A stretch of DNA of 64,000 nucleotides from NCBI GenBank assembly GCA_030704615.1, contig CM060733.1, positions 33,170,001 through 33,234,000 on the forward strand. Reading direction: 5' to 3'. Source of the stretch: Takakia lepidozioides. Taxonomy: Eukaryota > Plantae > Bryophyta. Below the pieces are notes generated by a model that worked only from the letters and a program-made list of their open reading frames with translations, did no database searches and was not told the DNA's origin. The position numbers and the translations under genes are program-made. The stretch's first letter is position 1. Each line of letters opens with the position of its first letter. Positions 17,986 to 61,600 of the stretch are shown piece by piece.

Positions 17986-19859
17986 ACATTACAGCCCGGG
18001 TTGGGTTGGGGGCTGAAGAGAACTTTCTGGAGTGAACATGGATATGTCTAGCATGATGTTATAACTGCCCAAGCATCACTATTTAATTCCTTGCAACGAC
18101 AAGGGTGGGGCGCCTCGGTCAGAACTTTCAGGTGGGTAGAAACAGGAGCTGATGGAAAGAGGCGAAGGTGTTGATGACGCTTGCGCACCTCCATGGCCCA
18201 TAACGAAACTGCGACCAAGGGTCTGGGATCGTTCCCGAGCAATGTGGAGTCTCACGCACAAATTCACAGACCCAAAGAACCCAGCAAAGAGAGTCAATGT
18301 CCCTACCTTCCTTCGAATCACCTGCAGAAGCGTGGTAGGCATCAATCAGGTGCACGGATGATCCCTCACTCCGTTGCCAACGTTGATGCCCATTCTGCTC
18401 CTCCTCACCCCGCTTTCTTCAATCTGCTGCATCGTGTGTGAGACAGCGAGAAACCTTCCTACTGCTCATTGCTACAGTCATCTTAATTGGCTGCATCCAT
18501 CCAGCTGTCGGCCCCGCCTCTACTCCACCGTGTCGCTCCCCCGCCCCTATTTCGCTCACCTCTTCTATGCTCCGATCTTCCCGCCTTTTCTCTGCTCGCC
18601 TGTCTCGCTCCCCCCGTTGTGTGTCTCTCTCTTTTGCGTTACAAGAGTACATGCTCTCACTGACTCACACTGCACGACAAAAAAGCATTACGTACAAGGA
18701 CCTGTACAAAGCTCACAGTATTCTGATATGAAAGCTCAATCACAAGGTTCGCTACAATTTTCACAGTGGCAGGACTCTCCCAGCTGAACTCGGTGAATTG
18801 AGTGAACTTCTCCCGCTCTCTCGCTCCCCCGCTCTCCAGTTCCGCTCCCCACCTCTCCCGATCCTCTCTCATTCCCGGGTCCCTCTGCTCCCCCGGGGTC
18901 CCCGTGGTCCCCTATCTTGCTTCCCCCGCTCCCCTGCCGCGTGCCCCGTTCCGTTCCCCTGTTCTAATCTCTTGGCCATCCATTCCCCATCGAGGTTCTA
19001 CAAGCTCCCTATAACTGGGGCTTGTACACATGACGACGGTTTGTTCTTCGCATGTGACTCACCGTTTCTTTTGAGACTCTACTCAAATATGCCAATATGA
19101 TGAGGTTCTTGCCTCCGAATCTCTAAATTTTTGGGATGGTTGTAGCTATCTTGCGAAAATATTCTCATTCCATGTTGGAACGATGTGCCACCGTCCTCCC
19201 AAGCTTTCTATGAGTATGTACATGGGATTCATGGTCGTTCTGATTTCCTTCCATGTAGGTAATTGACTCGGTTGGTGCGACAGAACATGCAGTATTTTAA
19301 ATATGCTGGCCCGGAGGTGATATGACCAACAATCCTCCTGTTTTCAGTATGGATCATTTCGCATACATTCTTGGTGTATTCATGCTATCTGCATGTACTT
19401 CACATGTATAATTTCACCTATGCATACAAGAGTCTATCGACATATATTGTAGTTTTACTTGCAATGAAATAGTCTTACCCGTGATTGAAGTTGACAAAAC
19501 GGTCGCATATATTCTACCCCCAATTTTGTGTGATCTTCTTTTTCGTGGCCTTCTCTGTCTCTCCCTTGTCAGTCACTCCATGTCTCGTCTTTGTTGATTA
19601 TGGTCCCCTCTATATGCCTTGTGACGATGGCCTACTCCCCCGTTCCCTACAGTTTTTGTGTTCCCATCATTTTGTCCGTCATATACGTGTTCCCCCGTAC
19701 ATCGTTCCACAGTCCCATGTATCATACGCTCCCTGTCGTTCTAGCCCGGTACAACGCGTCCGCTCGTGCAAACAGTTGCTTTTATTATTTGGCAGCATTT
19801 AGATTTCAGCTCGTCACCGTGTGCCACGTTGGTCCATACACGCGCTCCTCTATATAGTT

Positions 19860-28430: not shown

Positions 28431-31163
28431 TTAGCAATGATTGCTAGAAAATCCAATTTTATTCTGAGGCAAATCGAACAGAACTTGCATACGTTGTTGT
28501 TGCCAAGCGCCAAGAACACTCACTTTTGCTTTACTGAGGAAGCTGAAAGCTAAACAGATTTCTCCAAATTGGTCATCTCCCTCAAAGAACACAGTTTTTT
28601 CTTTACTCAAACGCCAAACCAACTCTTTTTTACCGTCGTCAAACACGAATGTCACAGTCGGAACGTCGGGAAGAGGCATGTTAGGTTCCACATTCCAACA
28701 CGTGTCAAAATAGATATATGTGAGTTGGGCAGAATGAGGTGGGCCTTGAGGCCCATTAGATAATCGCGATGCTTTATCAATAAATGCGGCCTTGAATGGC
28801 AAATATGCTTCTGTAGTGAGGGTTGTGTACGAAGTGCCGCTGTCGATTATCACACCTCCTTCACCTTCCTCGTCGATGTCAAAGATGCCAAGAGGCATAT
28901 TAGGCACTTCTTCCTCATTCACTAGAATTTTCGTGAGAGGAATGTAGTATGTACTTGTGACATCAGCCCCTTGTTGAGGCATTTGCACAAAGATGGCGTC
29001 TTGAACTGCAATGTATTGCAGAGAAGAACTTTGTCAAGATGATGTCTATATGTTATACAAAACAGAATTATGGCCATAAAAGAAGTACGAGTTAGAATGC
29101 TAATGTGGAATGTTTCTTTTTTCTGTACGTTTCAAGACAAAATTGCGACTCGTATATTTGTGATATAAAGATGAAAGACTCTTTGTCAAAGCAAGTGCAA
29201 CATTTGGTGTCCCTCCACTGACTATTGCCTTCAGTTTGCAAAGTTGACATCTTCTAACGGCCGAAACCGAGGGGACGCGGTTGCCCTCCCTTTGCCAGCT
29301 ATGACTAAAAAACCCAAATGTACCCACATTCTGTTTCTACTAGTTGATCCAGATACCTCATTTGTAGCTAAATTGCCCATAATATGTGATATCCAACATA
29401 TTGTACCTATGTGGATCTAAACGCATGACCACTTGTAAAGACGGCCTAGTGGCCCTAATCCTTTGGACCATGATCTGTTGCATGCTTGTTTCAAATAGAC
29501 AGTTACATGAAATGAAAAATGTATATACAATATTCATGATCTCCAGAACAACTTGACAACTTCACAAGAGGAGGAATTGAACGTACATAAGTCTATGGAC
29601 GAGGCACCAAAGAGCAAGAGTCCGTCTTCTTGCCCTTGGGCCTTTGGCAAACAATATGAGAATTGTTTGCTGATTTGTGGACCATTAAGGGCGATTTGGT
29701 CTGGCATGGAGAACTCAGATCTCCCTCCACCTCCAAGGCCCAAGATGCCGGCGGCCAACGCATTCATGGTTAGCGTTTGCTCATGCCCTAGACCAATCAT
29801 AATATCTACAAAATAAACAACATTACAAATATATTAAATGGAAAATACTAAGAGAAATATAAGCACTTAATGCACACTTGTAATTCTCTGACATGACGCT
29901 AAGCCAATTTCTAGCATGTCAAATCTTTTTTGTCCGCTCTCAAGAGTGACATTGAACTGAAAGGACTGTAACTCTACTTGGTGTAACTCCCACTTGGATT
30001 CACAATTTGATTAAGTCCAAATTTGGCTAAGTATAAAATGCACTAAGAGGAGTTACACAAGACATAGGAGTTTGACTCCATCCCACAACCTCTACCGCCA
30101 TCACCATACCGACATGCTACTCACCATTGCTTAACAACCTCTATCAATGGGTAAAGATATTACATGCCAAAAGCATTTCAAAAACAAGAAGAGTCATCAA
30201 GCATGTATACTTGGAATGGTGGTTTGAACTCCATATTGATTAGTCAATTGAATGACCTCCGTAGCAAGCCGACCCAAGCTGTACTCATCGTTGGCTTCTT
30301 GTATGTACTCGTTGTACTCCTCTCGATCATTTTGGCCATACCCATATTTGTATAGACAATTGCAATTGTTCTCTAGGTCACAACCATGAAAGTTACCATT
30401 TGCAAATAACTTAAGACATTCAATGTCACAACACGAAATATCTTTTGAGGTAGGCGAGGCCAAAGATAAATAATGAGTTGATTCTTGTGGTTGACAAAAC
30501 TGCACACAACCAAAATAAAATGCTAATTAATGTCATCATATTTGTCTTTAATAGTCCTTGAAAAAAGGAGTGTACACTCACGTCAAAAACACATTCCATA
30601 TCTAATACATGTCAACACATGATACGCCTTTCCAAAATATTGAATGAGACGGATGTACTCACATCACATGGGTAGGCTTGGATCCAAGTCAAGTCGCTGC
30701 CGGTGTCTAGGAATACATACTGGGAGACTATACCTGGAGCTGTGCCCACTTTAATGGTTGTAAAATAATCTAATTGTGTGCCGTATACTATTTGCGCCTG
30801 GGTCGCGAAGACCAACACTGTCTCTTTCAAGTTCCGGCTAGGAGCCTTGTTGCGCATGGAAGGGCCCAACGTTGCAGCATTATGCCGAGCCCTCCTAGCT
30901 GCACGCACACAAGCCTCATCGTCTTTGCCGCAATGAGTGGGTCTCAAAGGGGAGTGGGGCGAGTCAACGTGGGTGAGTGCAAGAGACACACCATGTTGGG
31001 TGGCATTGGTCTCAACCAACGGCCTGTATACTATATCATTGAGCACAAACTTGTGCTTTGTCCCATGGCTGACGTAGTCGTTGGTGACGCCCGATGAGTT
31101 GACTCGCAGTAATACAAGAAGAAAGAGGCAGCTGATGTAGAGCGCACACAGCTGTGCATCCAT
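28431..31163 (-). CDS. Secreted A1 (nepenthesin/atypical-type) aspartic protease; exons 31163-30663, 30499-30211, 29805-29587, 29005-28431 (527 aa)
   Basis: Signal peptide, LTHVDSPHSP propeptide, catalytic LDTGS and IDSGT, FSYCL, VLGAWQQQ; junction phases consistent (1584 nt). Confidence 0.9.
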
Positions 31164-31905
31164 TGCTTGTTTGTTGAGTGTTGCCGAAACATACTCATAC
31201 TTTGACAAGTAGCTTGGTAGTTATATAGACTAGGCCTAGGAACTACCGTAGTACCTTGGCAATTTTGACACAAATTTTAATATTTCAAAGATTATTGAAA
31301 ATTTTGGACATTGATTTTGTGAAATTAAATAACTTTGCGAATGATAATAAAACATCTTTGGGAATATTCCATATGTTGAAATGAAACTCTCAAAATAAAA
31401 TAAATATTCGACTGATTGTCAATCTTGCCAAGGTGGTACGGTATCACCCCCACTGATGTGGATTTTCTTCCACGACATTGCAATATTGCCAACGTAGAAT
31501 ACAATCATCTATAGATGGTGATGTTGCTTGCTTTATTTGACGGTTCTGGGGTTTTGGAGCTTTTCCGTTTTTGATATCATGCCGGTTCGCAACAAATACA
31601 AATTTTAACCCTATGCGGTTATGGACAAATGGAGTTTATGTGAGGATGGCATCCGACGGTTCAGTATCCGGTTATCAAACAAATCCAAGCTTATTTTATT
31701 AAAATAACCCAAACTTAAAAATCTAATGTATTGAAAATACTAATAAAAATAGTTACAATTATAGGGTAGAACGGAAAAGAGTGTTATTAGGAGATTTTCT
31801 ATTGTAAGTAATGCAGAAAATACAAGAGTTCAGTCAACTCTCACAAAATGGGATGCATCATAAAAGATGAAGTTATAAATATGCGTGCCTCTTCGAATGA
31901 AGATA

Positions 31906-46699: not shown

Positions 46700-48099
46700 T
46701 GTACTGTAGGTACTGTAATGTTTTCTAGATTGGGTAATATGCTAGCTGCTGAAGGTCAGCAAAATTAAGAATGTGCTAATATATCTTCAGACCTGTCCAT
46801 GCCACGACAAAAGCTAGAGCTATGATTGAAATATGGGCCAAATATCGGAGAGTCTGTGTATTATCATGAGAAGCTGGACAGGTGGTCAACGAGACTAGAC
46901 TAATTGCCACCTGAACATGTATGGAGTTGCATGTCATCACAAAATTGATTACTTGAGAAGGTGCTAATGGGGCTAGTACTACTACTTGAGGCTTAATTAC
47001 ACAACAAAACTGCAACCTAAAGATAGCAACAAGAATTAAGTGAGGGTTCAGGGTAGTTAGAGCTACTAGGGATTTTGACAATTGACGCAGTTTGATTGAA
47101 GATCAGACACAACCCATAACATAGCAGTGCGGAGTGCACATATGAGTACTAGAGATCATTTGATTGAAGATCTTAGTACAATTAGAGATAGAGGTACCTG
47201 ATGAACTCCCTCACTAAAATTAATCGGTGTCCTCAATGCTAGGGAAATCAAGGAAATCCACTAATAAGTTGTCTTTCTTTTCCCAAGTCGCCTCATGCTC
47301 TAGTTAATGAAAGATTCCACCCATCTACGATGTCGAGTATCACAAATGTGTGTTTCAAGCTCTCTCTGGTTCCGCTAAAATTTGACCGTTGGAATGACCT
47401 TAGGTAAAACAGACAACATCTGACCTAGATCAGCCATACATTCTCAACAGATTTTATACATGGAAAACATAATGTAATATTTTACATGAAGGAGGTAAAT
47501 CTAATTTGTATGCAGCTGATTTGTATTTTTCCAAAATGGGGAAGGGACCACAAAATCTAGGAGGGAGTTTGCAACAACAACATTAAGGTTGCAAACTCTC
47601 CCTTAGATTTAGTGGTCCCTTCCCCATTTTTCCCCATATTTTCATAGCTTTAAATGACTTATTTGACGTGGTGACACTTTCATACATATCATCAACCTTA
47701 ACTCAACCTCAAATTACGATAATATCTATTCTTATCTGCATAATGCTTAGTACGTTCCTGAGCCTTTGGATGCTTTGTTTAATCAGGGTTAGTTGCATAT
47801 TCATCTCACACTTGGATCTTGAGGTGAAGATAGTGTAATTGGAAATAACAATTTTTTTTTCCATAAATTGCAGCAAAAAGACTCATTCCAATAGTATATG
47901 AGGTTTATCATTATAAGCAAACTCTAACATATAGAGATACTCTTCCCATGAACTCCGTTTTTTCCAACGTATGTCGTCAACATATTAGATTCCAAGGTCT
48001 GATTAGTCCTTTGAGTTTGGGCATCAGTCTTAGGATGATAAGAAGTACTGAACTTAAGCTTAGTACCCAATATCCAAAACAAGGACCTCCAAAAATGTG
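46700..48099 (-). mobile_element. 3' part of a decayed chromodomain Ty3/Gypsy host element (integrase C-half, GPF motif, chromodomain remnant, PPT); left boundary approximate
   Basis: [32 protein letters not shown]...AYKLDLP, EATWE...; purine tract near 47205-47215. Confidence 0.75.
47533..47630. repeat. ~43-bp-stem inverted repeat (12-nt loop)
   Basis: aaaatggggaagggacca...tttgcaac / gttgcaaa...tggtcccttccccatttt. Confidence 0.9.
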
Positions 48100-48179
48100 T
48101 CGTGCGCATACATATCGCTACACAACTACATCGCTGTCCAAAACCACACAACACATGTGTACACCACACACTAATATAC

Positions 48180-48272
48180 CACTAGTCCACCACTAGTCCA
48201 GCCACTAGTCCAACCACTAGGCTGCCACTAGTCAGTCGTTAGGCTGCCCACTATGGCAGTCACTAGTCCACC
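48180..48272. repeat. CCACTAGT(C)-based short tandem repeats near the 3' end of the DNMT element
   Basis: Direct sequence. Confidence 0.85.
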
Positions 48273-48535
48273 ACAATCGCCCCCCTAGCTGGTGCTTAGG
48301 TCCCTCTAAGTCCAGGTAGCCACAAGATGTGATAGTGACCGTAGCCTCACTAAGTCCTCCACCACTGTCCCTATTACACTCAAACTCGATAGATCAAGAG
48401 GCCGGGTGCAAGAGTTGCCCCATCGTTAGTCGTCGTCTTGCAATCTGTGAACTTGAACCTGAGATCTCGTGTATTGACTCCTATGAGCTTGGCCTCCTAT
48501 GTCTTGTTAGCTGCCTCTAGTCATGTCCACTGCCA

Positions 48536-48685
48536 CTATCCCAAGCAGTGTGGACACAACCAATCTCCATCAGGAACCTTCTCAAGAGGTGGTGTCAAGC
48601 ATCCTATGTGCCAACCTCTTGAGCATCGATCACACACCAGCATGGTGGCTGCCCCTTTGGCAGACCCGCAGAGCATGCACCTCAA
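48536..48685 (-). other. PHD finger at the integrase C-terminus
   Basis: CMLCGSAKGAATMLVCDRCSRGWHIGCLTPPLEKVPDGDWLCPHC (C4HC3). Confidence 0.92.
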
Positions 48686-48773
48686 ACCTGCAAGGTACCA
48701 CTGCCAAGTTTGGGTCAACTCTGCCATTGACATTGGGAAGGTGACATGGCGCACAATTATGCACATGGTCTTT

Positions 48774-49800
48774 TCAAGTCATGCCATCCTGACCCTCCAA
48801 GATCAGGACTCCTGATGGCAACACCTCTCGAACCCTCAGAATAACACGCCCTGCAGTGACATCCAAGGTCGTAGAAGCAATCTGCTGCAAATAAACATAG
48901 TCACCAGGGCTAAACCTCCGAACCCTAGGATGATATCCTCCACCACGTATAGTGACATACCTCAACGTATCACGGTGCTGTGCAATGGCAAGGTTCTCAA
49001 AAGCCATGGGCATGACTTTCTTGAACAACTCTGCACGCTGATCACATGCACGTACCCACACGTCCGGATCGTCAAGGTTCAGGACTTGAGCAGTGTCCCT
49101 ACGACTGGCTGCAGGCAAATCCGGCTCTCGGCCAAAGAGAAGAAAATATGGTGAGAAGAAGACAAGTGATGTTTGCTTGCTGAATCGGTAGCCCATGGCT
49201 AACCAAGGTACCTGAAGACCCCAATCTCTTAGGTGTCCCTTCTGCAAGCCATACTTGCGCAAACCCCTCTTCACCGTCTGAACAACTCTCTCTGCCAAGC
49301 CATCGGCCTCAAGATGATCTCGAGAAGTTGTGTAGTGATCTATCAAGGCTTTATCACACAAAGCCTAAAACTCCCCCAAGAACTCTCTCCCTTGGTCCGT
49401 GAGTACCTCAGCTGGAGCACCGAATCGGCTAAGCACATGATCCAAGAATGCATACGCAGCCTCCTCACTAGCCTAGTCAGGCAATGGAAGCAACTCAATC
49501 CACTTGGAGAAGTATTCTACCATCACCAACACATAACTATGGTGGCGCATAGTCAGTGGCAACAGCCCTGTGAAGTCAAGACTCCACCTGTAGCCCAACC
49601 CCATGATTGGTAAATGATGCAACTGTGGTGTAGGGGCATTGAATGAAGCACGCACCCTGTCACACACCATGCACCTAGCCACAAACTGTTGCACCTCTGT
49701 ATGCATACCACGCCACCAATACTTCCCCTGCAGTAAACTGTGAGTACGTCGCACTCCAAAATGCCCCAACCCCTCATGGGCATGCCGCACTAAATGTGCA
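48774..49800 (-). other. Integrase (HHCC plus DDE core)
   Basis: HEGLGHFG...CMVC, WSLDF, VMVEYFSKW, ADGLAERVVQTVKRGL, SPYFLLFGR. Confidence 0.92.
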
Positions 49801-50189
49801 CGCTGTGTGGGGTGAGGCACAATCCTCACCCGACCATCCTCCCATACTCGGAGCAGGTGTATCCCCTCCCATTTGAACCTCTTGGCTCGTTGCAGGATCC
49901 GATCCATCTCCCTGTCAGTCACAGTGGCTGTCGTGTCTCCCATGCGGAGGTAGTCCAACACAGCCGAATCCTCATGTATATCTCTAGCACCACCTGGCTC
50001 ATCACTAGCCTCAGGGTCCTCAGACACTCCGTCTATAGTCATCCCTGTTGTAGGTCCAACCTGACCTCCCGCTGCCAAAATACACAAAAATGCAGATGCG
50101 TGCCATCCCGGCACCATCTCCTCGTCCGTCTCACCATGCCACCGAGCTCCAGTGTCATCCTGCTGGCTCGTGCATGGATTGCGACTCAA

Positions 50190-51450
50190 TCCATCCGCAT
50201 CCCGATTGACCAATCCCGGTCGATGCACAACTTGAAAGTCATACTCCTGGAGTATGAGTGCCCACCCTACAAGCTTCCCCGTAAGCTTGTCTGACTCCAT
50301 CAACCACTTGTGTGGCTGGTGATCCGTGACAAGGGTGAAAAAATTGATGTATAGATAGCACCTGAAAGTGTGCCACGGCCCACACCGCAGCTAAGCACTC
50401 TCCCTCATATGAACTGTACTTAGCCTCTACAGCGTTGTTCGAGCGGCTAGCATAAGCCACATCGAACTTTCTTTCCTCATCATCCACCTGTGTGAGCACC
50501 GCTCCAAGCCCCAGCATGCTCAAATCCGTATACAGCTGAAAGGGACGCCCCCTGATAGGTCGTCTCAGGATAGGCGCCGAGGTCAACCTCGCCTTGAGCT
50601 CTTGAAAAGCTCGTTCCTGCTCATCTTTCCACTGCCACTCCTGGTCCACCTTGGTCAGCTTGGTTAGAGCCTTTGCAATGACACTAAATCCCTTGACAAA
50701 CCGTCTATAATAGTTTGTCAACCCCATGAAAGCTCGAACTCGGCTCACATCCGTGGGGCGGGGAATTTGTGCAATGGCCTCTACCTTAGTCTGCTATACC
50801 CCCAATCCTCCAGGATATATCATGTGACCCAGATACTCAATCTGGTTGTGGAAAAACTTGTACTTTCCCGGATACAACTTCAATCCGTGCGTTCTCAAGC
50901 GCTCCAATACCACCTGAAGGTGTCTCTCATGCTCCTCCACCGTAGCACTAAAGATGATGATGTCATCTATGTAGCACCGAGCAAAGTCCACCTTTGCTAG
51001 AATCCTATCCATGACTCTCTGAAACTTTGCAAGAGCATTCTTAAGCCCAAATGGTAAGAACCGCCACTGATATAGGCAATCTTTGCCGTGCTCATTGATC
51101 CCCCCGAATGCCGTCTTTTGCTTGTTCGCCTCCTTGATCGGCAACTGGTGATATCCGGATCGTAAATCCAAAGTGCTAAAGACCTTAGCATGTCCGATGG
51201 CATCAAAGATCTCCTTTGGTGTTGGCATGACGTACTTATCAGACTTGGTCTGACGATTTACAGGCCGGTAATCACCGCACATACGTCTCTCCGTCCAATT
51301 GCCATAGACATCCTTCTTGGCTGGCATCACTGTGGCTGAAGCATACTCTCCACCAGAGAGCTCCACCAAACCAGCGTCCTAGAGGTCTCGAGTCCTCATC
51401 TGAATCAAAGTCCTCTCCATGTCACTGTATCTATAGGGTCTCCAAAAGAT
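50190..51450 (-). other. Reverse transcriptase and RNase H
   Basis: RMCGDYRPVN, FSTLDLRSGYHQ, LPFGLKNA, YIDD, FMGLTNYYRRFVKGFS, LYTD, AYASR, YEGECLA. Confidence 0.95.
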
Positions 51451-51879
51451 TGGAACCGTCGTATACGTCGTCTCTTTCCTCCAGTGACAATGGGTCCAAT
51501 GTCAGGCTCCCAATTGTCCTCCGTAACTGCAACCTTAAGTCCAGTGGGCTTAGAGATAGATGACGCGTCCAGTGGTTGCTATGTTGCAACCTCTTGAGTA
51601 GTACTCCCTGCCTGCTCAGTCAATGACAAGGCCTCATCCTGCCCCATCATCTCATCCTCGAGGACTTCCTCAACCCGAGAAAAATCCCCAACCTCATCCA
51701 TCACCGCCGCCCTGGCTGCCAACTCCCTCTGAACCTCGAGCACCTCCCACGTGTGCCATGGATGCCTGCACCCCGTGGTTCTCTCATGCTCGCCCCCACT
51801 CACTGTCTGTACTGTCTCAGTAGGCAGAGAGACCATTGAGGGAAGTGTACTCCGCATTCTACGTTGCTCAGCCATAGCC

Positions 51880-52830
51880 AAGCTGATAATCCAGGTCAAG
51901 CAATTGAGATCCATTGCTTGCCCCAACATCTGACGACGTGATGCCTCAGAAAGAGACAGCACCGCCGTGGTATCAGTGATAAAAACACATTGCCCGCTCA
52001 CGCTCGTCAGCATTAGGCTCCACTAACTGCTGCAACTATGCATCCCACAGGAGGCCAGGTCCGCTATCCCGGAAAGCATATGATCCTGGGAAGCTGAGCA
52101 GTGTAGGTAATGCTGCTCGTGGTTGACCCACCTTGTTGACCACTGCCAAAGGCGAACGGTCATCGTGTCTCACACGCTGAGACTGCTTTCCTGTGTCCGA
52201 AATGCTATCCACTATGAGGTGTGCTGGCCGCTGCACCCCATCAAATGCACGCTTGAGCAGTGCGGGTGGCATCAAGTTGGTCCACCATAGCCATGGACGA
52301 TGAGCCCGTGATCCCACTGTAGCTGCATCTAGCAATACTGTTGACCCAAGCCACGACCGGACTTGATGCACACTGGCCATCACCCTAGCCCGAGAATCGC
52401 CCATCAGTGACATATTCTCCAAGATATATGCTGGAGATACAGCTTGATGAAGCTGCAAGTGGCGCAAAACTCGCACCATCTCCCAAAACAGACCCGACCT
52501 CGAGTCTCGCAATCCATTGCCATGCCCGACTGATTAATGCCCTTGGCAGGGCCAACCTGCCACTATTAGATCAATGGAGCCAACCCACTCCAAATCTTGC
52601 GCCCCCAGCAACGAAATGTCTGCTGGCAAAGCCTGCTGAGATCCACGAACTGAGACACCGGCAACAACTTAGGGTACTGCTACACCAACTGAACAACATG
52701 ACAAAGTGAAATGTGTCGTGCAGTCTCATCCCTCTCCACATACAAGTAACGCCAAACTCGTACACCTACCTATAACACAGCAGCCAATCCGGTGTTGATC
52801 CCGCCAAACAAGTCCAGAAGACAAATGTCT
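51880..52830 (-). pseudogene. C5 cytosine DNA methyltransferase domain inside pol (stops and frameshifts)
   Basis: Motif I LLDLFGGINTG (~52790-52820), II YLYVE, IV IDLIVAGWPCQG (PCQ 52551-52543), RSGLFWE, VI YILENM, VIII SRAHRPWLWWTNL, IX ERERAM.F, X RRQMLGQAM. Confidence 0.9.
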
Positions 52831-53229
52831 TCATCCGGATACTGCCACACAATAGGTGTGGTGTCCAATAGAGACAATTGAGGTAGTTCTGGTGCAATCC
52901 CCGCTCTCTCCTCCTCTCCTAATGGTACAAAAGCCTCTACCCAGGCTTGTTGCACCCGTCGATCAACAACCTGCTGCAAATCCTTGCTCGTGCCCCACAA
53001 TGGAGTCTGAGCAATCATGGCAGGCAACTCCGCCATACCATGCATGTCATCCTGCTCTCCCGGAGGTGACACATCCTCTGAGTGTTGCCCTCAAACAACT
53101 CTCCAGGCCAACTCACTACAGCTGTGAATGCTGCGAGTGTTGGCATTTTGCCTCGCTGGGCAACCGCAACTCTTCCTATGAATGTCACAGGGAGCTGCAC
53201 ACGCCAGCCCTCCTCTGAGTGCAATCCAG

Positions 53230-53600
53230 GCCTATAAGAAGCTGACTCTTCCCAAAAATCTAGGGTGAAGCCCATGGGGTACAACACTGCCCCACCAACC
53301 AGGACATCGTACGAGACCGCGTCTGTCACAATGGCCTTGGCTCGCATTACTGAGCCATCTGTAGGGTGATCCGGCCGTAGTCTGATAGCCAACTCACGTC
53401 GTGTCATGCCTCAAGCCTGCTCCGATCCTCCCAGAGACGTCTGTATTTGGAAAGGACAAGGCTCCATATCCGCCTCCGTGAGGCCCAAGCCTGCAATAGC
53501 AGCTTTGCCCATCATCAATGGCTGAGCTCTCGAGTCCAACAAGACCCGCAGTGGCCGGTACCTCTTGCCTACCGGTCCACTCAAACAGAAAATGTCATCC
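53230..53600 (-). other. Retropepsin-type aspartic protease
   Basis: VLLDSRAQ (DSG>DSR) ... YDVLVG. Confidence 0.75.
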
Positions 53601-54429
53601 TGATTGTCTAACATGACAACTCTAGGTGTCACCATGGCGCGCTCAATGGCTGGCCTAGCTGGCAGCTCCATCAACCTGGCAGCTGCAGCTTGTCATGGCG
53701 CCGCCGTGGCAGTCTTGACCCTCAAATCCGAGGATCCCTCTGGCACTACACCTCCCACTATCTCCGCAGAAGATGAAGTAACCTCCCCACTCTCACAGAG
53801 TGTAGCTGCCAGCCTGAACACCTCAGCTGGTCTTACCCCCGGCGTCGCAATCATGGTAGCCGAGAACAATGGAGCCTGACACACAGATGTGGCCGCTCCC
53901 AGCAGCACACTAGCTGCCGTAGCCTTGGCAACACTAGGTAGTGGTGCTACCCGTGTAGCTCTCCCCAATGGCATAGTAACCTCCGCCTCAGTAACAGTCG
54001 GGCGAAAACTAGGTGCCATGGATGGCGTCGACACTGTCTCCGCCAATGTGAATGACTGAGGAAGCCTAGCTTGACGGCTTGCTTCCCCACGCTGTGGATC
54101 CAACTCCACCTCTGCACCTCGTGGCTCAAGATTTCGTGCTGCTCCTCGAGTCACGGCTGTAGCAGACTCCACCTGCACTAGTGGTAGTGCTACTCCGCAC
54201 ATGAATCCCATGCCTCCCATATCTCTTCCCTCATGAGCAGGAGGTGGACCATCCGGCCTTGGAGCCGGTACCACCTGAGCTGTAGCCATGGCAGCGAGCC
54301 TCTGCTCTAGCTACTGAAGCCGGTTGGCCATGCCTTGGTCAACACCCTGACCTCCGCGTCCTTGGCCATGTTGAGCTTGCCCTTGGCCTGCACCTCGTGC
54401 GTGGCCACCTCGTCCTCTCTGGGCTGCTC

Positions 54430-55565
54430 CACCTCACCCCCGGCCACCATTGTTCCCTTGGAATTGGCCTGGGCGCAACTCAGGATGCAAACCATAACAC
54501 TGGGCATCTCCATGCCCGCGCTTGCCACAATGCCCACACTGCAACTGTGCAGGCTGTGCATGTGCCGACCTTTTGCCTCCCTCTGGGCAATCTTTCTTGA
54601 CATGACATCCTCCACATGTCCAACACACCACCTTTGCCCGTTGTTGGCTTGCAAATGAAGGGAGAGACCCCTGCATCTGAGGTCCTCTCTGTCCTTCCCT
54701 GGGCTTCACCTGGGCCCTCTTGTTGCCTTGAGCACGTTGAGGTAGTGGTTAGCTAGGAGCACCACTACCCCGTGGTGTCTCCTTAGCAAATCCCACCATG
54801 ACCACTCGTTCCTCCACCATGTTGAGCTCTATCCGCTCTGCCAGCAAAAACACATTTGCTAAAGTGGGTTCGGCCGCTTGTAGGAGAATTGCATCCCGCA
54901 CCCTTCTCCTCAGCTCCTTGTCCAATATCCCATACCAGAATTAGACTGTCTGAGCTTCCGTAACCCCTTGGGTTACATTTATCAAGCACCTCATGCAAGT
55001 GAAAGCCTCCCTCAAGCTCTCAGTAGGCTTTTGTTGGAACTCTTGCAAGCTCCGCAACTTCTCTGTCCTCACCCCCTTGATAGTTCCCTCTCAACTCTTC
55101 GAAGAACTCCACAACAGGGTTGAAGGCAGGCACGGGTACTGGTGCTGGTGCGGTAGTGGTTTGGGTGGACGTCGTAGCTACGGTGCCACCAGTCCCACTA
55201 GTCCCACTGCTGTTTGCTGAAGCTGTCGGTCCAGCGGCAGGTGTAGCCACTGCCCTCGTGGCTCTAGTGCCCCTAGTGATGGAGACATAGTCGGGTGACC
55301 AGTACATCCTCCAACTCCTCGATCTCAACCTCATGCCCCTGCCTGAACTCATGGTAATCATCCATAGGCGGCCCCTCAAGGTGCTGAAACAACCCCTTCC
55401 ATGCCATGAAAGGCGTAAATAGTTGTGGATTGCGCATTTGCTGCAAATCACACCAACTATCAAACACTTGGATAAAATCATCCAACTCGATGGTGCCCAC
55501 CGCCCCAGAGTACCTTCGTGGCCCCTTGGTAGCTCCATACATCTCTTGCATTGTGTCCCACAACA
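54430..55565 (-). other. Gag with two zinc knuckles
   Basis: PRRYSG...DDFI..FDSWC; CWTCGGCHVKKDC and CGHCGKRGHGDAQC. Confidence 0.8.
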
Positions 55566-56459
55566 ATGGCAAGGAAACAACTTGCACCGCCGGTGTGAGT
55601 CCTCCTGATTCACAATCCGAATCAGAACCTTCCATAGGAAGACACAGGAGGTGAAGGTGGCCTAAACCGCACACCTCGTCTCGTGTATCCACTAGTATCG
55701 CTAGTGCTCGAACCGGCACTGTCCCCAGCAACTAGTGGCACCTCCGTGTTGACAAACTATCACTCAACCGGTCATGAACATGTCCATAACCCCCTCTCCA
55801 CAAAGTAATCGGGTAGAGAACCTGTTGCGGCTTATGGTTTGGAATACTAGGTTCCTAACATAGCCTACACCTGCACCTGCATCCACCGCAAACACTTCTA
55901 TGGTTGGCTGGTCATCACCTCCAACCTCACCATAAGAGAAACAATGATGGTCTGACTGGTCATCACCCCAGCCTCACCATCGACAGCATGCTCTAGGACT
56001 GGCCGGTGATCAAACCCGGACCAATCACCTATAAAAACAAGCGCCCACACAAAACTAACATGGCGCACAGTCAAGCATGCAGGTATGGAGGGGATTCAAA
56101 CACAAGAAATCAGAACGACAACTCCCCCACACCAAAAACAAGTCCACGGTGTTGCTCCTGCAAGGACACCCCAGCCCAAACCCGGACTGACTCTTGCCTC
56201 CACCTACGGAAAGTTCTTGGCCTAATGAGAGGGTGGAAAACTACGAAGAAGAGAAGCTAAAGCAATGCCTAACCCCAGCATGCCCTCATCCCAACACTCT
56301 TCCTCTCCTCTCTTCCCTCACTTGCATGACCATGCGAATATCATGAAGATACTCCTCAAACCGCCCTCCACGAGCGTCAAAATTCGGCCTTCAAGACCAC
56401 ATGCCAGTCCTTAGGCAGTCCACCAGTGCCTCCACGAGTTAGCACAGGCCGTCCACAGG

Positions 56460-56800
56460 TCAACTCGGGCCACCACAGATCAGCACAGGCCCACACGGAT
56501 CACAGGCCACAGCCCATCACAGCCCCAAAGGCCACAGGTCACAGCCTGTCACAACTTGTCACAGGTCACAGGATCACAGCCCCACAGGCCACAGCCTGTC
56601 ACAGCCCATCACAACCTGTCACAGCCCCAAAGGCCACAACCTGTCACAGCCCATCACAGCCCCACAGGCCACAGGGCACAGCCCATTACAGCCTGTCACA
56701 GCCCGTCATAGCCCCACAAGCCACAGGGCACAGCCTATCACAGCCCGCCACAGCCCATCACAGCCCCACAGGCCACATGGCATAGCCTGTCACAACCCCA
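56460..56800. repeat. CACAGCC/CACAGG minisatellite upstream of gag
   Basis: Direct sequence. Confidence 0.92.
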
Positions 56801-57269
56801 TCCATGGCCACTCATGGCAGTTTAGCCATTTCTCCAAGGGGTTTAGCCATGCCAAGCTAGGGTTTGTGTCTCTTGGGCTGTAGGCTTCTTTGCACCGAGC
56901 TATGGCGGCTGTGAGGAAATCAACAAGGTATCTTGCTCTTTATGGCCCCCACGCACCACCAATAGTAGCTCTAATTCCAAAGGAAGATGTTTGCAACCGA
57001 AACTAAGTGCACAAGCTTCATTTTAACTCACTAAACAGCGCCATTGATCCCTATGGCGACTAACCAAACATGGCTAACTTCCAGCCCTTGTAGGCACTCA
57101 TTCACGTGCTTTTCTTGACCATAGCATGCCTTTCACACCTAATCCAGCCCCTGCTCCTGCTGCTTCAAGAGTGTGCTCCCTTCAAGCTTGAAGTTGAAAC
57201 CCCAACTCACATAGGCCCTACAAGTGTTTTTATTTCACTCCAAGTGGAAACCAGCCCTAGCCCTTCCAT

Positions 57270-57665
57270 TCTAGCTCTCTAAAGCTTGAAAACAAGAGCC
57301 TCAATGGGCTGAAGGCATGCTCCACACATGCCCCACTCTCACCATAAGAGAATCAGCTCATTTGCTTCATTTCTTGCACCCACAAACCTGAAAATACAAG
57401 CTTCAGTGGGCTGAAAGCATGCTCCACACATGCCCTATAGGGGAACCAGCCCCTTCCTTCATTTCTTGCACTCCCAAAACCTGAAAGTACAAGCCTTCAA
57501 CAGGCTGAAAGCATGCTCCACACATGCATTGCTCTCATATAAGGGAAGTCAGCCATTCCCTCTTCCTTGCTTGCCCTCCAAGCTTGAAGATGGAAGCTTC
57601 AATGAGCTGAATACATGCTCCACACATGCAACCTCTTCACAGAAGAGATATCAGCCCCCTATCTT
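57270..57665. repeat. ~100-bp tandem repeat (4 copies; gctgaa.gcatgctccacacatgc)
   Basis: Core recurs at ~57308, 57410, 57504 and 57605. Confidence 0.88.
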
Positions 57666-58609
57666 GGCTCCTTGGCTCCTTGATGCTCTCTAAGACAAGA
57701 CTAAGCACTCCACAACCTTTGCCAAGCTCCTGAAACCCTAAGGCTTACATTTCCAGCCACAAGACACTCCTCTTGTGGTGCAAGAGCTCTTCTTCCAAGC
57801 TCTGAAACCCTAGGTGCACATTCCATGGCCTTGCCGCACCTCTTAGCTCCTGTTCCAGCCCTGCTCTTGCCATGACAAGAGCCCTCTCAATGCTAAAGCT
57901 CGAGATTGAAACCCAATCTCAACATACTCCACAAAGTGCACTGATTTGCCCCAAGCCAAAATCAGCCCTTTTGCTTGGTCTTGCAATCCTTCACACAATG
58001 AAAGCTCGCATTCCCAAGTCCAGTTGTCAGCTTTGCCACCAAAGCCACTCTAACCTGCTCTTGACTGGTCCTCTTTCCAATCGTGTTTGCTCATGCATGT
58101 ACACAATCTGAAACCATCAAGGTGCTCTGGAATTACCTGCAGCATGGTGCTTTCATTTCTGAAGCTGAAGATCGAATGCCAAGGTCTACTACCTCGTAAC
58201 CCACATCGCCTCCGCTTCTAACAACCTGGTTTCTCTCATTCTCAAGCAAAAACCACAAGTGCTACAACTAACTCGTATCTGGCACTCACAGATACGAGCT
58301 CATCTTTCTCGAGTGATAAAGAAGAGAATACAAGCACAAGCTCATGCGAACTCACAAAGCTGAAGCATAAACTCATGCATATATAAACTCATCACTCAAA
58401 TACAAGTCAAGCCAAGTGTGGGGAATCCACACTACGGCGCCATAGCTAGGCGCGGTGAGGCTCAACTCGAGAAAGATGAGCCTCCCGCACTTGCCGTGAA
58501 GATAACCACTCCATGGCCTAAATCTGCCTTGACCCCTGGATTGACACTTGGGCCAATCCCAAATGTCAATATGTAAAAGCTAGCTATTTCCTAGCTAGTT
58601 TCACACTAG

Positions 58610-61600
58610 TGGTGAACCATCTATATCAGAGATGATCTCTCGCGATATTCCATGCAATCTATAAATCTCATTCATGAAGAGTTTGGCAATATCTGAAGTG
58701 GCTGTCATTTTGGTGGGCACAAAATGTGCTTGTTTTGATAGTCTATCCACCACAACAAATATGTTATCATGGTTATGCCGTGTTTTAGGCAAAGCCATAA
58801 TAAAATCCATGCTTATGGATTTCATCAATCAATCTGTTGTCACTGGTAAGACTTAAAAAATGAGAATTAAAGAATGCATCTGTTGCATAATGACCATTGA
58901 TCTTATCAATCAATGTGCTTCTGACAATCGATACAACCGCAATCAAAGGTCTTCTAAACAAAACAACATGTCAACAATCACATTTTCTTTATCCTTCACA
59001 TATTGAATTTGATATGTGAGTCTTGAAATAATTCCACCCAACGACGTTGTCGTCTGCGTAATTTTGGTTGGGTAGATAAATATTTGAAGCTCTCGTGATC
59101 TGTTTCAATCCTGAATTCAATAGGAAGCAAAGACCATAACCGTAGTGTTGAAGATCTGTTGAAATTAATACTACTCAAGCCTCTCGTTGTTGCAATGCTC
59201 CAAATTTTGAGAGCATGAAATATTACTGTCAGTAAATTTTTTTTATTGATAGGATAATTGATCATTACAGCTGGACTCAGCTTTCTGGAGTCATATGTAA
59301 TCACATGCCCCTCTTGCATTAAAACTGCACCAATAGTTAGATCACTAGCATCAGTATATAATACAATGTCTTTTATCATATGATTCAATAATCGCAAAAT
59401 TGGAGCATGTGTTAAAACATACTTCAATCTAGCAGAACCCTCATCATATTTTTCAGTCTATGAAAACATCACTGTGTTTTTCAACAAATCACTTAACGCA
59501 GCTGCAATTCATGTTTGTTTCAGCTGCGCAAATTTATCCTTCGATCCCTCCAAGAGCCGCATCACCTCAGTACATTTGCCATTTTCAAGAGCCTTAAACC
59601 ACGCCGAGTCTGGAGGTGCCTCCTTAAATTTGCTAGCCACTGCAAGCCCACTAATTCCACCATTGCCAGACATTGTTATCGAGAAATGATGAATTGAATT
59701 TAACAAACTTTCGCAAATAACTTGCTTGTCCAAGGAAGCTTCTTACCTCGATTTTGTTTTTTGATATAGATAAATCTTTGTCGACAAAATGACTTTGTTT
59801 TTTGTTCGTCTTTGAGCTATAACTCTTGAATTCGAAAGTCCATTTGAGCCAATCTCTAGTCCTCCATGTGATCATCATCTCCCCTCTTGTAGGTCATTAG
59901 AAATGATCCATCTCGAGGACTAGGGTTATCGAAATTCTCCATCCTCTTTGTCTCGTAGGGAGACAGACTTCGTTGATCCCTAAGTCGACAAGAACCTAGT
60001 ACTTCTCCCTACGCTGGGGAGCAGATGAGAAGATCAACCCTCCCCTAGACATCTACCCACCAACAAGCTCCCATAATGCCATGAGCTGCGTCTACGCTTT
60101 TATTAGGAAACAATTTTATTGAGATCCTTTGAAAAACCAGCATATGTGTCGTGTACTCAGCTCATGAATGTGATCCAAACAATATGACAGGCTTGCCCAC
60201 GAAGATCAGTGGATCAACTCTCTCAAAGCCACAAAGCCACAAAACACATGAAGTTGAAATAAACGCAGAGAGGAGAGAGGATGTCTCAGGTGAAAGGTGA
60301 GAAGATCTTCTGTTGTTGCCAAGTCTAATATTTGTGGAAAGCTGGTTTAGTGAAACATTCAGGGATCTATTTAATAAATAGGTCATTGCAACCTACAAGA
60401 ACCTGAGAGTAAAATGAGAAACAACTGATGTTGTCTTAAAATATCCAGCACAATTCTTAGATATTGCTCATGTCATCTTCAGTATTTGAAAAGACAATAA
60501 TAACAGAAAACACAAATCACAGGGTGTGAAGGAGCGTGTCTTGTGGTTGAGTAGACTCGGTGTGTTAACAACGAATGTACTTCTCAGCAAGGTGAGATTT
60601 TACACCCCCCCCCCTCCCCCCCCCTCCCCCCCCCCAACACATCCGATATTGTATCGGATAGGGGTACTCGGAGTCTCAATACCATTATCAGATACATGTA
60701 AAAACCATTATACTTCATTATAATACTTACGCTGGATACTGGGCAGGGTGTTGCGATGTCATCGATAAACAACAATACCATCTTACCACAATATTTTCTA
60801 AACAGAGAATTCATCAAATGTATAAAAGTGGCACGAGCATTTGTAAGTCCAAATGCATCACCAAGAATTTGTAATGTCCAAAACGAATTCAAAACCCAGT
60901 TTTAGTTAATATGTCCGATTCTTTGACGCGAATATGATGATACATTTTAAGATCTAGTTTAGAAGAAACCTTGCTCCCATACATATGATCATACAATCGT
61001 CGATACGGGGGAAATGATATTTGTTCTGGATAGTTACCAAAATCAAGAATCTATAATCCACACAAGACACAATCCTCCATCCTTCTTGTCAGTGAACAAT
61101 ATAACAGGAGCACCCCATGATGATTTACTAAGGTATATATATCATTTTCCAACAAGTTACTCAATTGCTTTTATAACATGATCTACCTCACGTTCCGGGA
61201 GTAATGTTGTAATATCCTTTGAAAATATGTCTTTGTAATCCTTTAATAGTAATGCATCAATACAAGAAGACCTACGATTCGTTCGTCCATCATCTAGATC
61301 ATTTTGCCGAAGCTCATGAATACTAACAACAAAATCTGATTTTTTCCCTTTCTCATACAACGTTTTAATTGTTTTCCTGCATTAAGCAAATGAGAAAAAA
61401 GAAGGACATAACTATAGTTGATCTCAGATGCAATCGTAGCGAGCTCCACCCCAAATTTCAAAAATGACTTACGTTTGAATTCTTTGGATTGTCATGGCAA
61501 TATCAGCCAATATCAGGTATTCCAAAATTTGTTGTCAGAAAAGGCCATGAGAGCTAACCCTGCAGAAGTAGCAGTGAAAACTAAGTTAGTTATTTTCCGG

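What the first reader, a model, noticed from the sequence alone, without database searches (positions are those of the whole stretch)
51880..52830. Ty3/Gypsy retrotransposon carrying its own C5 DNA methyltransferase between protease and RT, in a land plant
Seen: reading through a few stops and frameshifts that the ORF track splits, the pol region contains the C5-MTase motifs in canonical (non-permuted) order: LFGGINTG, YVE, AGWPCQG, RSGLF, ILEN, AHRP.LWWTN, ERERAM.F, R.QMLGQ. The domain is intronless and colinear with the protease upstream and RT downstream. Knowledge: PCQ/EN/RxR are the catalytic motifs, the VIII-X wording resembles DNMT3-like enzymes, and plant DRMs are permuted, so this is not a captured DRM. 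From memory, retrotransposon-borne DNMTs were reported in dinoflagellates and the charophyte Klebsormidium (de Mendoza et al. 2018); I know of no functional description in embryophytes. Inference: the family encodes a polyprotein-processed MTase that could methylate its own cDNA or insertion sites (camouflage, self-regulation or host epigenome manipulation). This copy is dead.
Basis: partly seen in the sequence, partly recalled or inferred. Interest (0 to 1): 0.95.

Follow-up and report, generated by a model that had tools for sequence, protein, structure and literature searches.

The report
Dead Gypsy retrotransposon with DNMT3-type methylase
This is a broken copy of a plant jumping gene whose family carries its own DNMT3-type DNA-methylating enzyme and a histone-reading PHD finger. 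The type was described in 2018 from the alga Klebsormidium, and here it sits, in very many copies, in a land-plant genome.

Summary

What it is:
- **The element.** A roughly 10.5-kb Ty3/Gypsy-type retrotransposon (about 48,120-58,610), ordered gag-PR-DNMT-RT-RNaseH-INT-PHD, nested in an older Ty3 integrase.
- **This copy is dead.** The DNMT part alone has four in-frame stops, two frame changes and a lost motif-VIII arginine.
- **The domain belongs to the family.** The 165-aa DNMT piece finds 602 relatives, many of them intact polyproteins. P0169 (2,358 aa) has the identical architecture.
- **Land-plant relatives.** The nearest named relatives are liverworts. Calypogeia fissa has a 780-aa open PR-DNMT frame with every motif; Marchantia polymorpha has a remnant.
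- **It is DNMT3-type.** A family profile and a confident fold model both match DNMT3A/B/C best. DRM matches only in the way its permuted motif order predicts.
- **Selection.** Between two intact relatives, DNMT dN/dS is 0.095.
- **Abundance.** DNA runs of the source organism hold tens of thousands of family contigs, and these cover the DNMT part like the RT part.
- **Host.** PPR-E-DYW genes in the window mark a land plant; the exact lineage is not fixed.

This is a new member of a known kind (Gypsy-DNMT3, de Mendoza 2018), not a new kind. The scan had already noted and followed up sibling copies elsewhere in this genome. Enzymatic function remains untested.

The parts
48120..58610 (-). Whole decayed Gypsy-DNMT3-PHD retrotransposon copy. 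It is GC-rich (52%) and inserted into the integrase gene of an older AT-rich Ty3 element. The ends are approximate.
   Evidence: The GC step is shown. The two halves of one older integrase lie at 47,927-48,181 and 58,604-58,828. The element is colinear with P0169 and P0025. CpG o/e is 0.47 and TpG/CpA o/e is 1.39.
55750..58610 (-). 5' non-coding part, with two tandem-repeat blocks (56,418-56,800 and 57,263-57,660). No matching terminal repeat is found at the other end.
   Evidence: the repeat finder and self-blastn.
54467..55731 (-). gag-like region with two CCHC zinc-knuckle patterns (54,587-54,625 and 54,497-54,538).
   Evidence: tblastn of the N-terminal parts of P0162 (4e-11), P0037 (9e-12) and P0169, plus a regex for the knuckles. 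DNA homology to the Marchantia locus L005. No Pfam hit.
53018..53692 (-). Aspartic protease region, with one in-frame stop at 53,411-53,413.
   Evidence: tblastn against P0169 644-782 and P0025 772-961. No Pfam hit on the pieces.
51860..52860 (-). DNMT3-type C5 cytosine methyltransferase domain, broken. It has in-frame stops at 52,770-52,772, 52,680-52,682, 52,534-52,536 and 52,036-52,038, frame changes near 52,650 and 51,985, and Trp in place of the second conserved Arg of motif VIII.
   Evidence: Translations, motif coordinates, alignment A1, phmmer and weak Pfam hits at the right profile positions.
51379..51859 (-). Diverged linker between DNMT and RT. Other family copies carry about 92 extra bases at 51,452/51,453.
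   Evidence: read laying record 11 and the loose ends. There is no HSP to P0169 1276-1389.
50797..51378 (-). Reverse transcriptase (an open 194-aa piece).
   Evidence: Pfam RVT_1, 1.8e-30.
50242..50793 (-). RNase H.
   Evidence: Pfam RT_RNaseH_2 (2.9e-28) and RT_RNaseH (1.1e-16).
48777..50390 (-). Integrase (H2C2 zinc domain and DDE core), with stops at 49,473-49,475 and 49,365-49,367.
   Evidence: Pfam Integrase_H2C2 (5e-16) and weak rve. tblastn against P0169 1748-2300 at 49% identity.
48539..48700 (-). PHD finger at the integrase C-terminus.
   Evidence: Pfam PHD, 5.8e-12. The nearest solved PHD fingers are those of CHD4, KDM5B, KDM5A, ATXR5, PHF21A, AIRE and UHRF1.
47927..48115 (-). Downstream half of the interrupted integrase of the older AT-rich Ty3 element. 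This is flank, not part of the DNMT element.
   Evidence: Translation and sequence.
58611..59427 (-). Upstream half of the older AT-rich Ty3 element (RNase H and the start of integrase). This is flank.
   Evidence: Pfam RT_RNaseH, 1.9e-17, and translation.

Best explanation
The stretch is the broken methyltransferase domain of a decayed copy of a Gypsy-DNMT3-PHD retrotransposon, lying in a land-plant genome.

In intact family members one polyprotein, or two adjoining ORFs, carries gag, protease, a DNMT3-type C5 cytosine methyltransferase, RT, RNase H, and an integrase ending in a PHD finger.

Shown here:
- the architecture;
- the DNMT3-type fold, with invariant catalytic residues across the family;
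- purifying selection on the domain in intact relatives;
- very high copy number in the source organism;
- the death of this copy, with a C-to-T decay signature.

Inferred, at about 35-40% for the specific mechanism: the enzyme is made with, or cut from, the polyprotein and travels with the particle or pre-integration complex. It then methylates the element's own newly made DNA or fresh insertion. The PHD finger on the integrase steers integration to chromatin whose histone H3 lysine 4 is unmethylated. Together the two would act as a split reader-writer pair that sets the insertion's methylation state, for camouflage or self-limitation.
For: **Motifs and colinearity.**

**Relatives and architectures.**
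- There are 602 relatives, with two architectures among them.
- P0169 has the identical PR-DNMT-RT-RH-INT-PHD layout.
- Pfam PF00145 is significant in relatives.
- Calypogeia fissa has an open 780-aa PR-DNMT frame with every motif. Its element is 65-70% identical in DNA to the window's over about 4 kb.

**DNMT3 type.**
- The family profile scores DNMT3A at 2e-23, DRM at 4e-14, M.HhaI at 1.6e-9 and DNMT2 at about 1e-6.
- The AlphaFold model has pLDDT 94.6.
- All top 50 Foldseek hits are DNMT3A/B/C, with target TM-scores of 0.81-0.85 for catalytic-domain chains.

**Conservation and selection.**
- The catalytic Cys, the Glu of ENV and both Arg of motif VIII are invariant or nearly invariant in 80 sequences at 35-48% identity.
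- dN/dS is 0.095 for DNMT, 0.27 for gag and 0.037 for RT-RH.

**Trees.**
- The window groups with Calypogeia, Marchantia and P0001 at SH-aLRT 100.
- The DNMT and RT trees both split the two architectures on one branch.

**Copy number.** 59,407 family contigs were laid from one DNA run, and depth over DNMT is like that over RT and INT.

**Decay.** The window has T or A where the family has C or G at 209 places, against 92 places the other way. CpG o/e is 0.47-0.54.

**Land plant.**

**PHD finger.** Its nearest solved relatives are readers of unmodified H3 (plus my knowledge of those proteins).

**Two-ORF relatives.** In some relatives the DNMT sits at the end of the gag-PR ORF, so it would be made at gag level.
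Against: - Pfam on the window's own pieces is below threshold.
- No enzymatic evidence exists for any Gypsy-borne DNMT. The Klebsormidium domain gave no methylation in yeast, which the authors call inconclusive.
- No terminal repeats are detectable in this copy.
- Evidence of transcription is weak. Contigs about 92% alike occur in runs only guessed to be RNA.
- No named Klebsormidium sequence and no host DNMT3 sequence could be retrieved, so orthology with KnitGypsy-Dnmt3 and the donor of the domain were not tested by tree.
- The host lineage is unsettled. The TE's nearest named kin are liverworts, but the window's PPR-DYW gene is most like lycophyte paralogues at 54-57%.
Confidence: 0.88

Rival explanations
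1. One-off capture: this single copy picked up a piece of a host DNMT3 gene or pseudogene between PR and RT. The family as such would not encode a methyltransferase.
For: No LTR pair is found and the copy is heavily rearranged or decayed.
Against: - The same domain sits in the same place in intact polyproteins from other sources (P0169, P0167, P0025).
- It is also there in Calypogeia fissa and Closterium.
- Contigs of the source organism's DNA runs cover the DNMT part as densely as RT and INT.
- The scan noted many sibling copies in the same genome.
Confidence: 0.02
2. The domain is conserved but does not methylate DNA. It would serve as a DNA- or RNA-binding or RNA-methylating module, or as a structural part of the polyprotein.
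For: - The KnitGypsy-Dnmt3 domain gave no methylation in yeast, and the authors raise RNA methylation for retrotransposon DNMTs.
- The query model is about 75 residues longer than the DNMT3 catalytic domain (query TM-score 0.67 against target TM-score 0.84).
Against: - The catalytic Cys, the ENV Glu and both motif-VIII Arg are invariant or nearly invariant over 80 diverged sequences.
- dN/dS is 0.095.
- Human DNMT3B also failed in the same yeast assay, so that negative result is uninformative.
Confidence: 0.2
3. Independent acquisition: the land-plant elements captured a DNMT3 separately from the Klebsormidium elements, so the resemblance would be convergent.
For: - De Mendoza 2018 documents repeated independent captures in other lineages.
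- Two different positions of the domain exist (PR-DNMT-RT and RH-DNMT-INT).
- No Klebsormidium sequence could be placed in my trees.
Against: - All 150-plus relatives form one DNMT family, well apart from the bacterial-like outgroup.
- The DNMT and RT trees agree on the split between the two architectures. This fits one capture followed by one relocation.
- Streptophyte algae (Closterium, Spirogloea) sit in the same architecture clade as the liverwort copies.
Confidence: 0.12
4. Assembly or nesting artefact: the apparent PR-DNMT-RT order comes from a separate DNMT-bearing sequence inserted into an ordinary Gypsy element.
For: The window is a mosaic of nested transposons.
Against: - Base composition is uniform across the element.
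- Single open reading frames span PR-DNMT-RT in relatives.
- The DNA alignment with the Calypogeia element is colinear.
Confidence: 0.01

Closest known systems
KnitGypsy-Dnmt3 of Klebsormidium nitens (de Mendoza et al. 2018, PMC5890265). A 2026 preprint (10.64898/2026.05.21.726589) refers to it as streptophyte Gypsy-DNMT3.
   Same: - Gypsy-type pol domains.
- An intronless, non-permuted DNMT3-type domain inside Pol.
- Conserved catalytic residues and Ka/Ks below 0.2.
- Terminal repeats that are not simple LTRs. A relative here, L008, has mixed direct and inverted repeats.
   Different: - The host is a land plant, not a charophyte alga.
- Copy number is very high, whereas the paper says Klebsormidium has few copies.
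- The paper's text does not mention a PHD finger.
- The paper's text does not give the position of the DNMT, so PR-DNMT-RT may or may not be the same layout.
- Direct sequence kinship was not tested.
SymbioDIRS-Dnmt3 and SymbioLINE-Dnmt of Symbiodinium (same paper)
   Same: Retrotransposons that carry a DNMT in the RT-containing ORF. The SymbioDIRS-Dnmt3 domain methylates CG de novo in yeast.
   Different: They belong to DIRS and LINE classes with a tyrosine recombinase or endonuclease, not a DDE integrase. The host is a dinoflagellate, and the capture was independent.
Animal DNMT3A/3B/3C catalytic domain with its ADD reader
   Same: It is the best sequence-profile and fold match. The logic of pairing a reader of unmethylated H3K4 with a de novo methyltransferase is the same.
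   Different: There is no PWWP or ADD domain. Identity is about 22%, and there are about 75 extra residues.
Chromoviruses (Ty3/Gypsy elements with a chromodomain on the integrase)
   Same: A chromatin-reader domain is fused to the integrase C-terminus and presumably guides integration.
Plant DRM methyltransferases
   Same: They are DNMT3-related catalytic domains found in plants.
   Different: DRM is circularly permuted. The family profile matches DRM only with its N-terminal half against DRM's C-terminal part. The element's domain is colinear with DNMT3A.

Membership tests
C5 cytosine DNA methyltransferase (Pfam PF00145) | Motifs I (FxGxG), IV (PCQ), VI (ENV), VIII (RxR), IX and X in canonical order | tested here: met
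   All motifs were located on the minus strand in order and aligned to 33 relatives.
C5 cytosine DNA methyltransferase (Pfam PF00145) | Score above Pfam's gathering threshold | tested here: inconclusive
   The window pieces score 11.6 and 13.3 bits against a cut-off of 22. Intact relatives pass: P0025 at 46.1, P0008 at 45.5, and the Calypogeia ORF at 40.6 bits.
C5 cytosine DNA methyltransferase (Pfam PF00145) | An intact catalytic domain in this copy | tested here: not met
   There are four in-frame stops, two frame changes, and Trp for the second Arg of motif VIII.
DNMT3 type | Closest to DNMT3 by sequence profile and by fold, with non-permuted motif order | tested here: met
   The profile scores DNMT3A at 2e-23, against DRM at 4e-14 and M.HhaI at 1.6e-9. 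All top 50 Foldseek hits are DNMT3A/B/C.
DNMT3 type | Placement inside the DNMT3 clade in a tree with host DNMT3, DRM, DNMT1 and bacterial enzymes | not tested
   No host DNMT3 or DRM sequences could be retrieved as usable ids. Only a bacterial-like outgroup was available.
DNMT3 type | N-terminal PWWP or ADD reader domains, as in animal DNMT3 | tested here: not met
   Pfam finds neither on the full polyproteins. A PHD finger sits on the integrase instead.
Gypsy-DNMT3 retrotransposons (KnitGypsy-Dnmt3) | Gypsy pol set (PR, RT, RNase H, DDE integrase) with the DNMT inside Pol, intronless | tested here: met
   In intact relatives single ORFs span the domains.
Gypsy-DNMT3 retrotransposons (KnitGypsy-Dnmt3) | [quoted passage not shown] | tested here: met
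   dN/dS is 0.095 between L009 and L010, which lie in the sister clade of the liverwort copies. It was not measurable on the dead window copy itself.
Gypsy-DNMT3 retrotransposons (KnitGypsy-Dnmt3) | DIRS-like (split or permuted) terminal repeats instead of plain LTRs | tested here: inconclusive
   No terminal repeats at all are found in this copy. The relative L008 has mixed direct and inverted repeats.
Gypsy-DNMT3 retrotransposons (KnitGypsy-Dnmt3) | Sequence kinship with the Klebsormidium elements | not testable with these tools
   No hit carried a Klebsormidium name, and the paper's sequences are not held.
Ty3/Gypsy LTR retrotransposon | RT-RNase H-integrase order with an H2C2 zinc domain and a DDE core | tested here: met
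   Pfam RVT_1, RT_RNaseH_2 and Integrase_H2C2, plus weak rve.
Ty3/Gypsy LTR retrotransposon | A pair of long terminal direct repeats | tested here: not met
   None was found down to 20 nt with seed 10, nor by blastn with word size 9.
Plant DRM | Circularly permuted motif order (VI-X before I-V) | tested here: not met
   The order here is I to X. The DRM match covers only profile positions 2-136 against DRM residues 230-354.

The most novel reading that the evidence does not exclude
The Gypsy-DNMT3-PHD lineage is still active in some land plants. It would work as a split reader-writer. The PHD-tipped integrase places new copies in chromatin with unmethylated H3K4, and the element's own DNMT3-type enzyme methylates the new DNA. 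At the copy numbers seen here, the element's enzyme would then also contribute measurably to the host methylome.
Probability: 0.15. Interest if true: 0.8.

Novelty: new member of a known kind. Interest (0 to 1): 0.45.

Why it matters
Retrotransposons that carry the very enzyme hosts use to silence them are a paradox, and so far they are documented only in algae.

This work shows that the same kind of element sits in land plants. It is present in very high copy number here. A motif-complete open copy exists in the liverwort Calypogeia fissa, and remnants exist in the model Marchantia polymorpha.

That moves the question "why would a transposon methylate DNA?" into organisms where methylomes, transformation and chromatin assays are routine.

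It also matters for annotation. Fragments of these elements can be, and have been, called as host "hypothetical proteins" or as extra DNMT genes, which would inflate counts of plant DNMT3 genes.

Tried and rejected
- **Pfam on the window's own DNMT pieces.** The hits are only sub-threshold, so I relied on relatives.
- **Terminal repeats.** No LTR or other terminal repeat was found in this copy with three settings.
- **Rfam on the whole window.** Nothing was found.
- **Naming the organism.** The sequencing-run search returned coded names. Exact look-ups hide the window's own proteins. The PPR-DYW search gave only land plants, with 54-57% as the best identity. I therefore say "land plant" and leave the lineage open.
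- **Host DNMT3, DRM or Klebsormidium sequences.** None could be fetched for a joint tree.
- **Careful IQ-TREE run.** It did not finish in 300 s, so the quick mixture-model tree is reported.
- **First atlas call.** It failed on length. The second gave only a generic streptophyte C5-methylase cluster.
- **Rejected readings.** One-off host-gene capture, a nesting artefact, and DRM origin; see the rival explanations.
- **Not attempted.** I did not use complex prediction, because no binding claim is made.

Full report
**What is in the sequence**

The finding lies on the minus strand. Three-frame translation of 51,400-53,100 and a motif search place the motifs as follows:
- motif I (LFGGINTG): 52,788-52,811
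- motif II (YVE): 52,734-52,742
- motif IV (AGWPCQG): 52,540-52,560
- RSGLF: 52,486-52,500
- motif VI (ILEN): 52,414-52,425
- motif VIII (AHRPWLWWTN): 52,276-52,305
- motif IX (ERERAMCF): 51,982-52,005
- motif X (RRQMLGQAMD): 51,909-51,938

The order is canonical. Reading the domain requires passing four in-frame stops (52,770; 52,680; 52,534; 52,036) and two frame changes (near 52,650 and 51,985). At the second conserved arginine of motif VIII this copy has tryptophan, where Calypogeia, Marchantia and the rest of the family have arginine.

**The element around it**

On the minus strand the order is as follows.
- A gag-like region with two CCHC knuckles lies at 54,467-55,731. It is homologous to the gag parts of P0162 and P0037.
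- The protease lies at 53,018-53,692, followed by the DNMT.
- RT follows (RVT_1, 1.8e-30), then RNase H (2.9e-28), the integrase (H2C2, 5e-16) and a C-terminal PHD finger (5.8e-12).
- Between protease and PHD I count about ten in-frame stops and about six frame changes.

The element is GC-rich (52%, against about 40% in the flanks). It splits the integrase of an older AT-rich Ty3 element, whose two halves lie at 47,927-48,181 and 58,604-58,828. That gives a span of about 48,120-58,610.

No LTR pair or any other terminal repeat is detectable.

**Is the domain a property of the family?**

The longest open DNMT piece (165 aa) finds 602 proteins at E<=1e-3 among 1.84 billion representatives. Many are long polyproteins. 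Domain mapping shows two architectures:
- A: gag-PR-DNMT-RT-RH-INT, as in the window.
- B: RT-RH-DNMT-INT-PHD, which is the majority.

P0169 (2,358 aa) has exactly the window's layout, including the PHD finger. It aligns colinearly with the window at 45-58% identity.

Named relatives are these.
- Calypogeia fissa CAM6104272.1 (65% identity).
- Marchantia polymorpha OAE24016.1 (58%).
- Closterium spp., Spirogloea, and, with architecture B, Monoraphidium.

In Calypogeia a 780-aa open frame holds the protease and a DNMT domain with every motif. Its element is 65-70% identical in DNA to the window's over PR, DNMT and RT-INT. Marchantia keeps only a remnant.

In DNA runs of the source organism, 59,407 contigs match this 6-kb stretch. 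They cover the DNMT bins like the RT and INT bins.

**What kind of methyltransferase?**

- Pfam PF00145 is significant in intact relatives.
- A profile of 80 family domains scores DNMT3A at 2e-23, DNMT3B and DNMT3C at about 1e-21, DRM at 4e-14, M.HhaI at 1.6e-9 and DNMT2 at about 1e-6.
- The DRM match joins only the N-terminal half of the profile to the C-terminal part of DRM. That is what DRM's permutation predicts, whereas the match to DNMT3A is colinear.
- An AlphaFold2 model of the P0169 domain is confident (pLDDT 94.6, pTM 0.91). All of its top 50 Foldseek matches are DNMT3A/B/C, with target TM-scores of 0.81-0.85 for catalytic-domain chains.

I could not place host DNMT3 genes in a tree, so the donor is not shown.

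**Selection and history**

- Across 80 domains at 35-48% identity, the catalytic cysteine, the glutamate of motif VI and the first arginine of motif VIII are invariant, and the second arginine is nearly so.
- Two intact elements from different samples (L009, L010) lie in the sister clade of the liverwort copies. They are organised as gag-PR-DNMT followed by RT-RH-INT-PHD. Their dN/dS is 0.095 for DNMT, 0.27 for gag, 0.18 for the protease region, 0.037 for RT-RH and 0.052 for INT-PHD.
- In DNMT trees, the window, Calypogeia, Marchantia and P0001 form a clade (99 with FastTree; 100 SH-aLRT with IQ-TREE and a mixture model). This clade sits inside an architecture-A clade supported at 98.
- The RT tree separates architecture B on one branch with support 100.
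- The simplest reading is one capture and one later move of the domain. The root is not established.

**Decay of this copy**

Where the window differs from the bulk of family contigs, it has T or A against their C or G at 209 places. The reverse holds at 92 places. CpG observed/expected is 0.47-0.54, with an excess of TpG/CpA at 1.39-1.46. This is the usual trace of deamination of methylated cytosines, so the copy was probably methylated by the host after insertion.

Runs only guessed to be RNA hold contigs about 92% alike over RT-RH and the DNMT end. This is a hint of family transcription, not proof.

**Host**

The window also holds an intact PLS-type PPR-E-DYW gene (3,674-6,415, minus strand; DYW deaminase 4e-43) and a PPR-E gene. 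The 120 best relatives of the former are all land plants. The best identities, 54-57%, are to the lycophyte Diphasiastrum.

"Land plant" is therefore supported. "Liverwort" rests only on the transposon's nearest named kin, and I leave it open. Marchantia itself is unlikely, since marchantiid liverworts lack DYW editing factors (my knowledge).

**How it probably works (inferred)**

The enzyme is part of the polyprotein. In the two-ORF relatives it ends the gag-PR frame, so it would be made in gag-like amounts and could be packaged. The most likely role is methylation of the element's own new DNA or fresh insertion, as de Mendoza et al. proposed.

The PHD finger's nearest solved relatives are those of CHD4, KDM5A and KDM5B PHD1, ATXR5, PHF21A, AIRE and UHRF1. 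To my knowledge these read unmodified H3K4 or H3R2. Such a finger on the integrase could steer insertion to such chromatin. This mirrors the ADD-plus-catalytic-domain logic of animal DNMT3, but split across the polyprotein.

None of this has been shown. The one bench test of the Klebsormidium enzyme was negative and inconclusive.

**Comparison with what is known, and novelty**

Gypsy-DNMT3 elements were described in Klebsormidium nitens in 2018, and a 2026 preprint refers to them as "streptophyte" elements. PHD fingers in retrotransposons are known in general. I found no paper in the searchable library that reports such elements in embryophytes.

This is a new member of a known kind. The additions are land-plant hosts, very high copy number, the PHD pairing, and two alternative positions of the domain.

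The scan had already noted at least 13 sibling copies in this genome and followed several of them up, with the same conclusion. This particular copy adds little beyond confirmation.

I built no consensus and no repaired frame of the element. The broken gene was searched piece by piece.

Noticed in passing
window 3674-6415 (-) and 10688-12565 (-): There is an intact 912-aa PLS-type PPR-E-DYW ORF (DYW deaminase 4e-43) and a 624-aa PPR-E ORF about 4 kb apart. All best relatives are land plants, with top identity 54-57% to Diphasiastrum complanatum.
   Followed up: partly
window 28431-28988 and 30612-31208 (-): Two ORF pieces of a TAXi/nepenthesin-type aspartyl protease gene (TAXi_C 1.9e-31; weak TAXi_N). 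They are probably exons of one host gene.
   Followed up: no
window 48539-48700 (-): The integrase-borne PHD finger is most like PHD fingers that read unmodified H3K4 or H3R2 (CHD4, KDM5A/B PHD1, ATXR5, PHF21A, AIRE, UHRF1). This suggests that integration is targeted to H3K4-unmethylated chromatin.
   Followed up: partly
window 58608-58613 and 48190-48262: The palindrome ACTAGT occurs right at the 5' junction and several times within 150 nt of the 3' end of the element. It may relate to the palindrome-cut permuted repeats that earlier notes describe for this clade.
   Followed up: no
window 56418-56800 and 57263-57660: There are two tandem-repeat blocks in the element's 5' non-coding part. One has units of about 52 nt rich in CACAGCC. 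The other has four units of about 100 nt at 65-80% identity.
   Followed up: no
L009 469-7605 and L010 601-7752: These are intact relatives with two ORFs, gag-PR-DNMT then RT-RH-INT-PHD, separated by a stop and a short spacer. The methyltransferase would be made at gag level, and RT-INT only by readthrough or a frameshift.
   Followed up: partly
L007 1-18357: The contig that carries the intact P0169 element is an 8,262-bp unit repeated 2.2 times at 99.9% identity. It could be a tandem array, or a circular form assembled round and round.
   Followed up: partly
L008 8595-19143: The element that encodes P0167 is flanked by a mix of direct and inverted repeats (for example 9,368-9,667 equals 17,465-17,764, and 9,567-9,910 is inverted at 18,798-19,143). 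They are not plain LTRs.
   Followed up: partly
P0191 (Monoraphidium neglectum), residues 2260-2407: This architecture-B element carries a Tudor domain (PF21743) after the PHD finger, giving it a second chromatin reader.
   Followed up: no
L005 9001-14909 (Marchantia polymorpha): The annotated 'hypothetical protein' OAE24016.1 is a spliced gene model drawn over a remnant of this transposon family (protease plus the C-terminal half of the DNMT). It is an annotation artefact that could be counted as a DNMT-like gene.
   Followed up: partly
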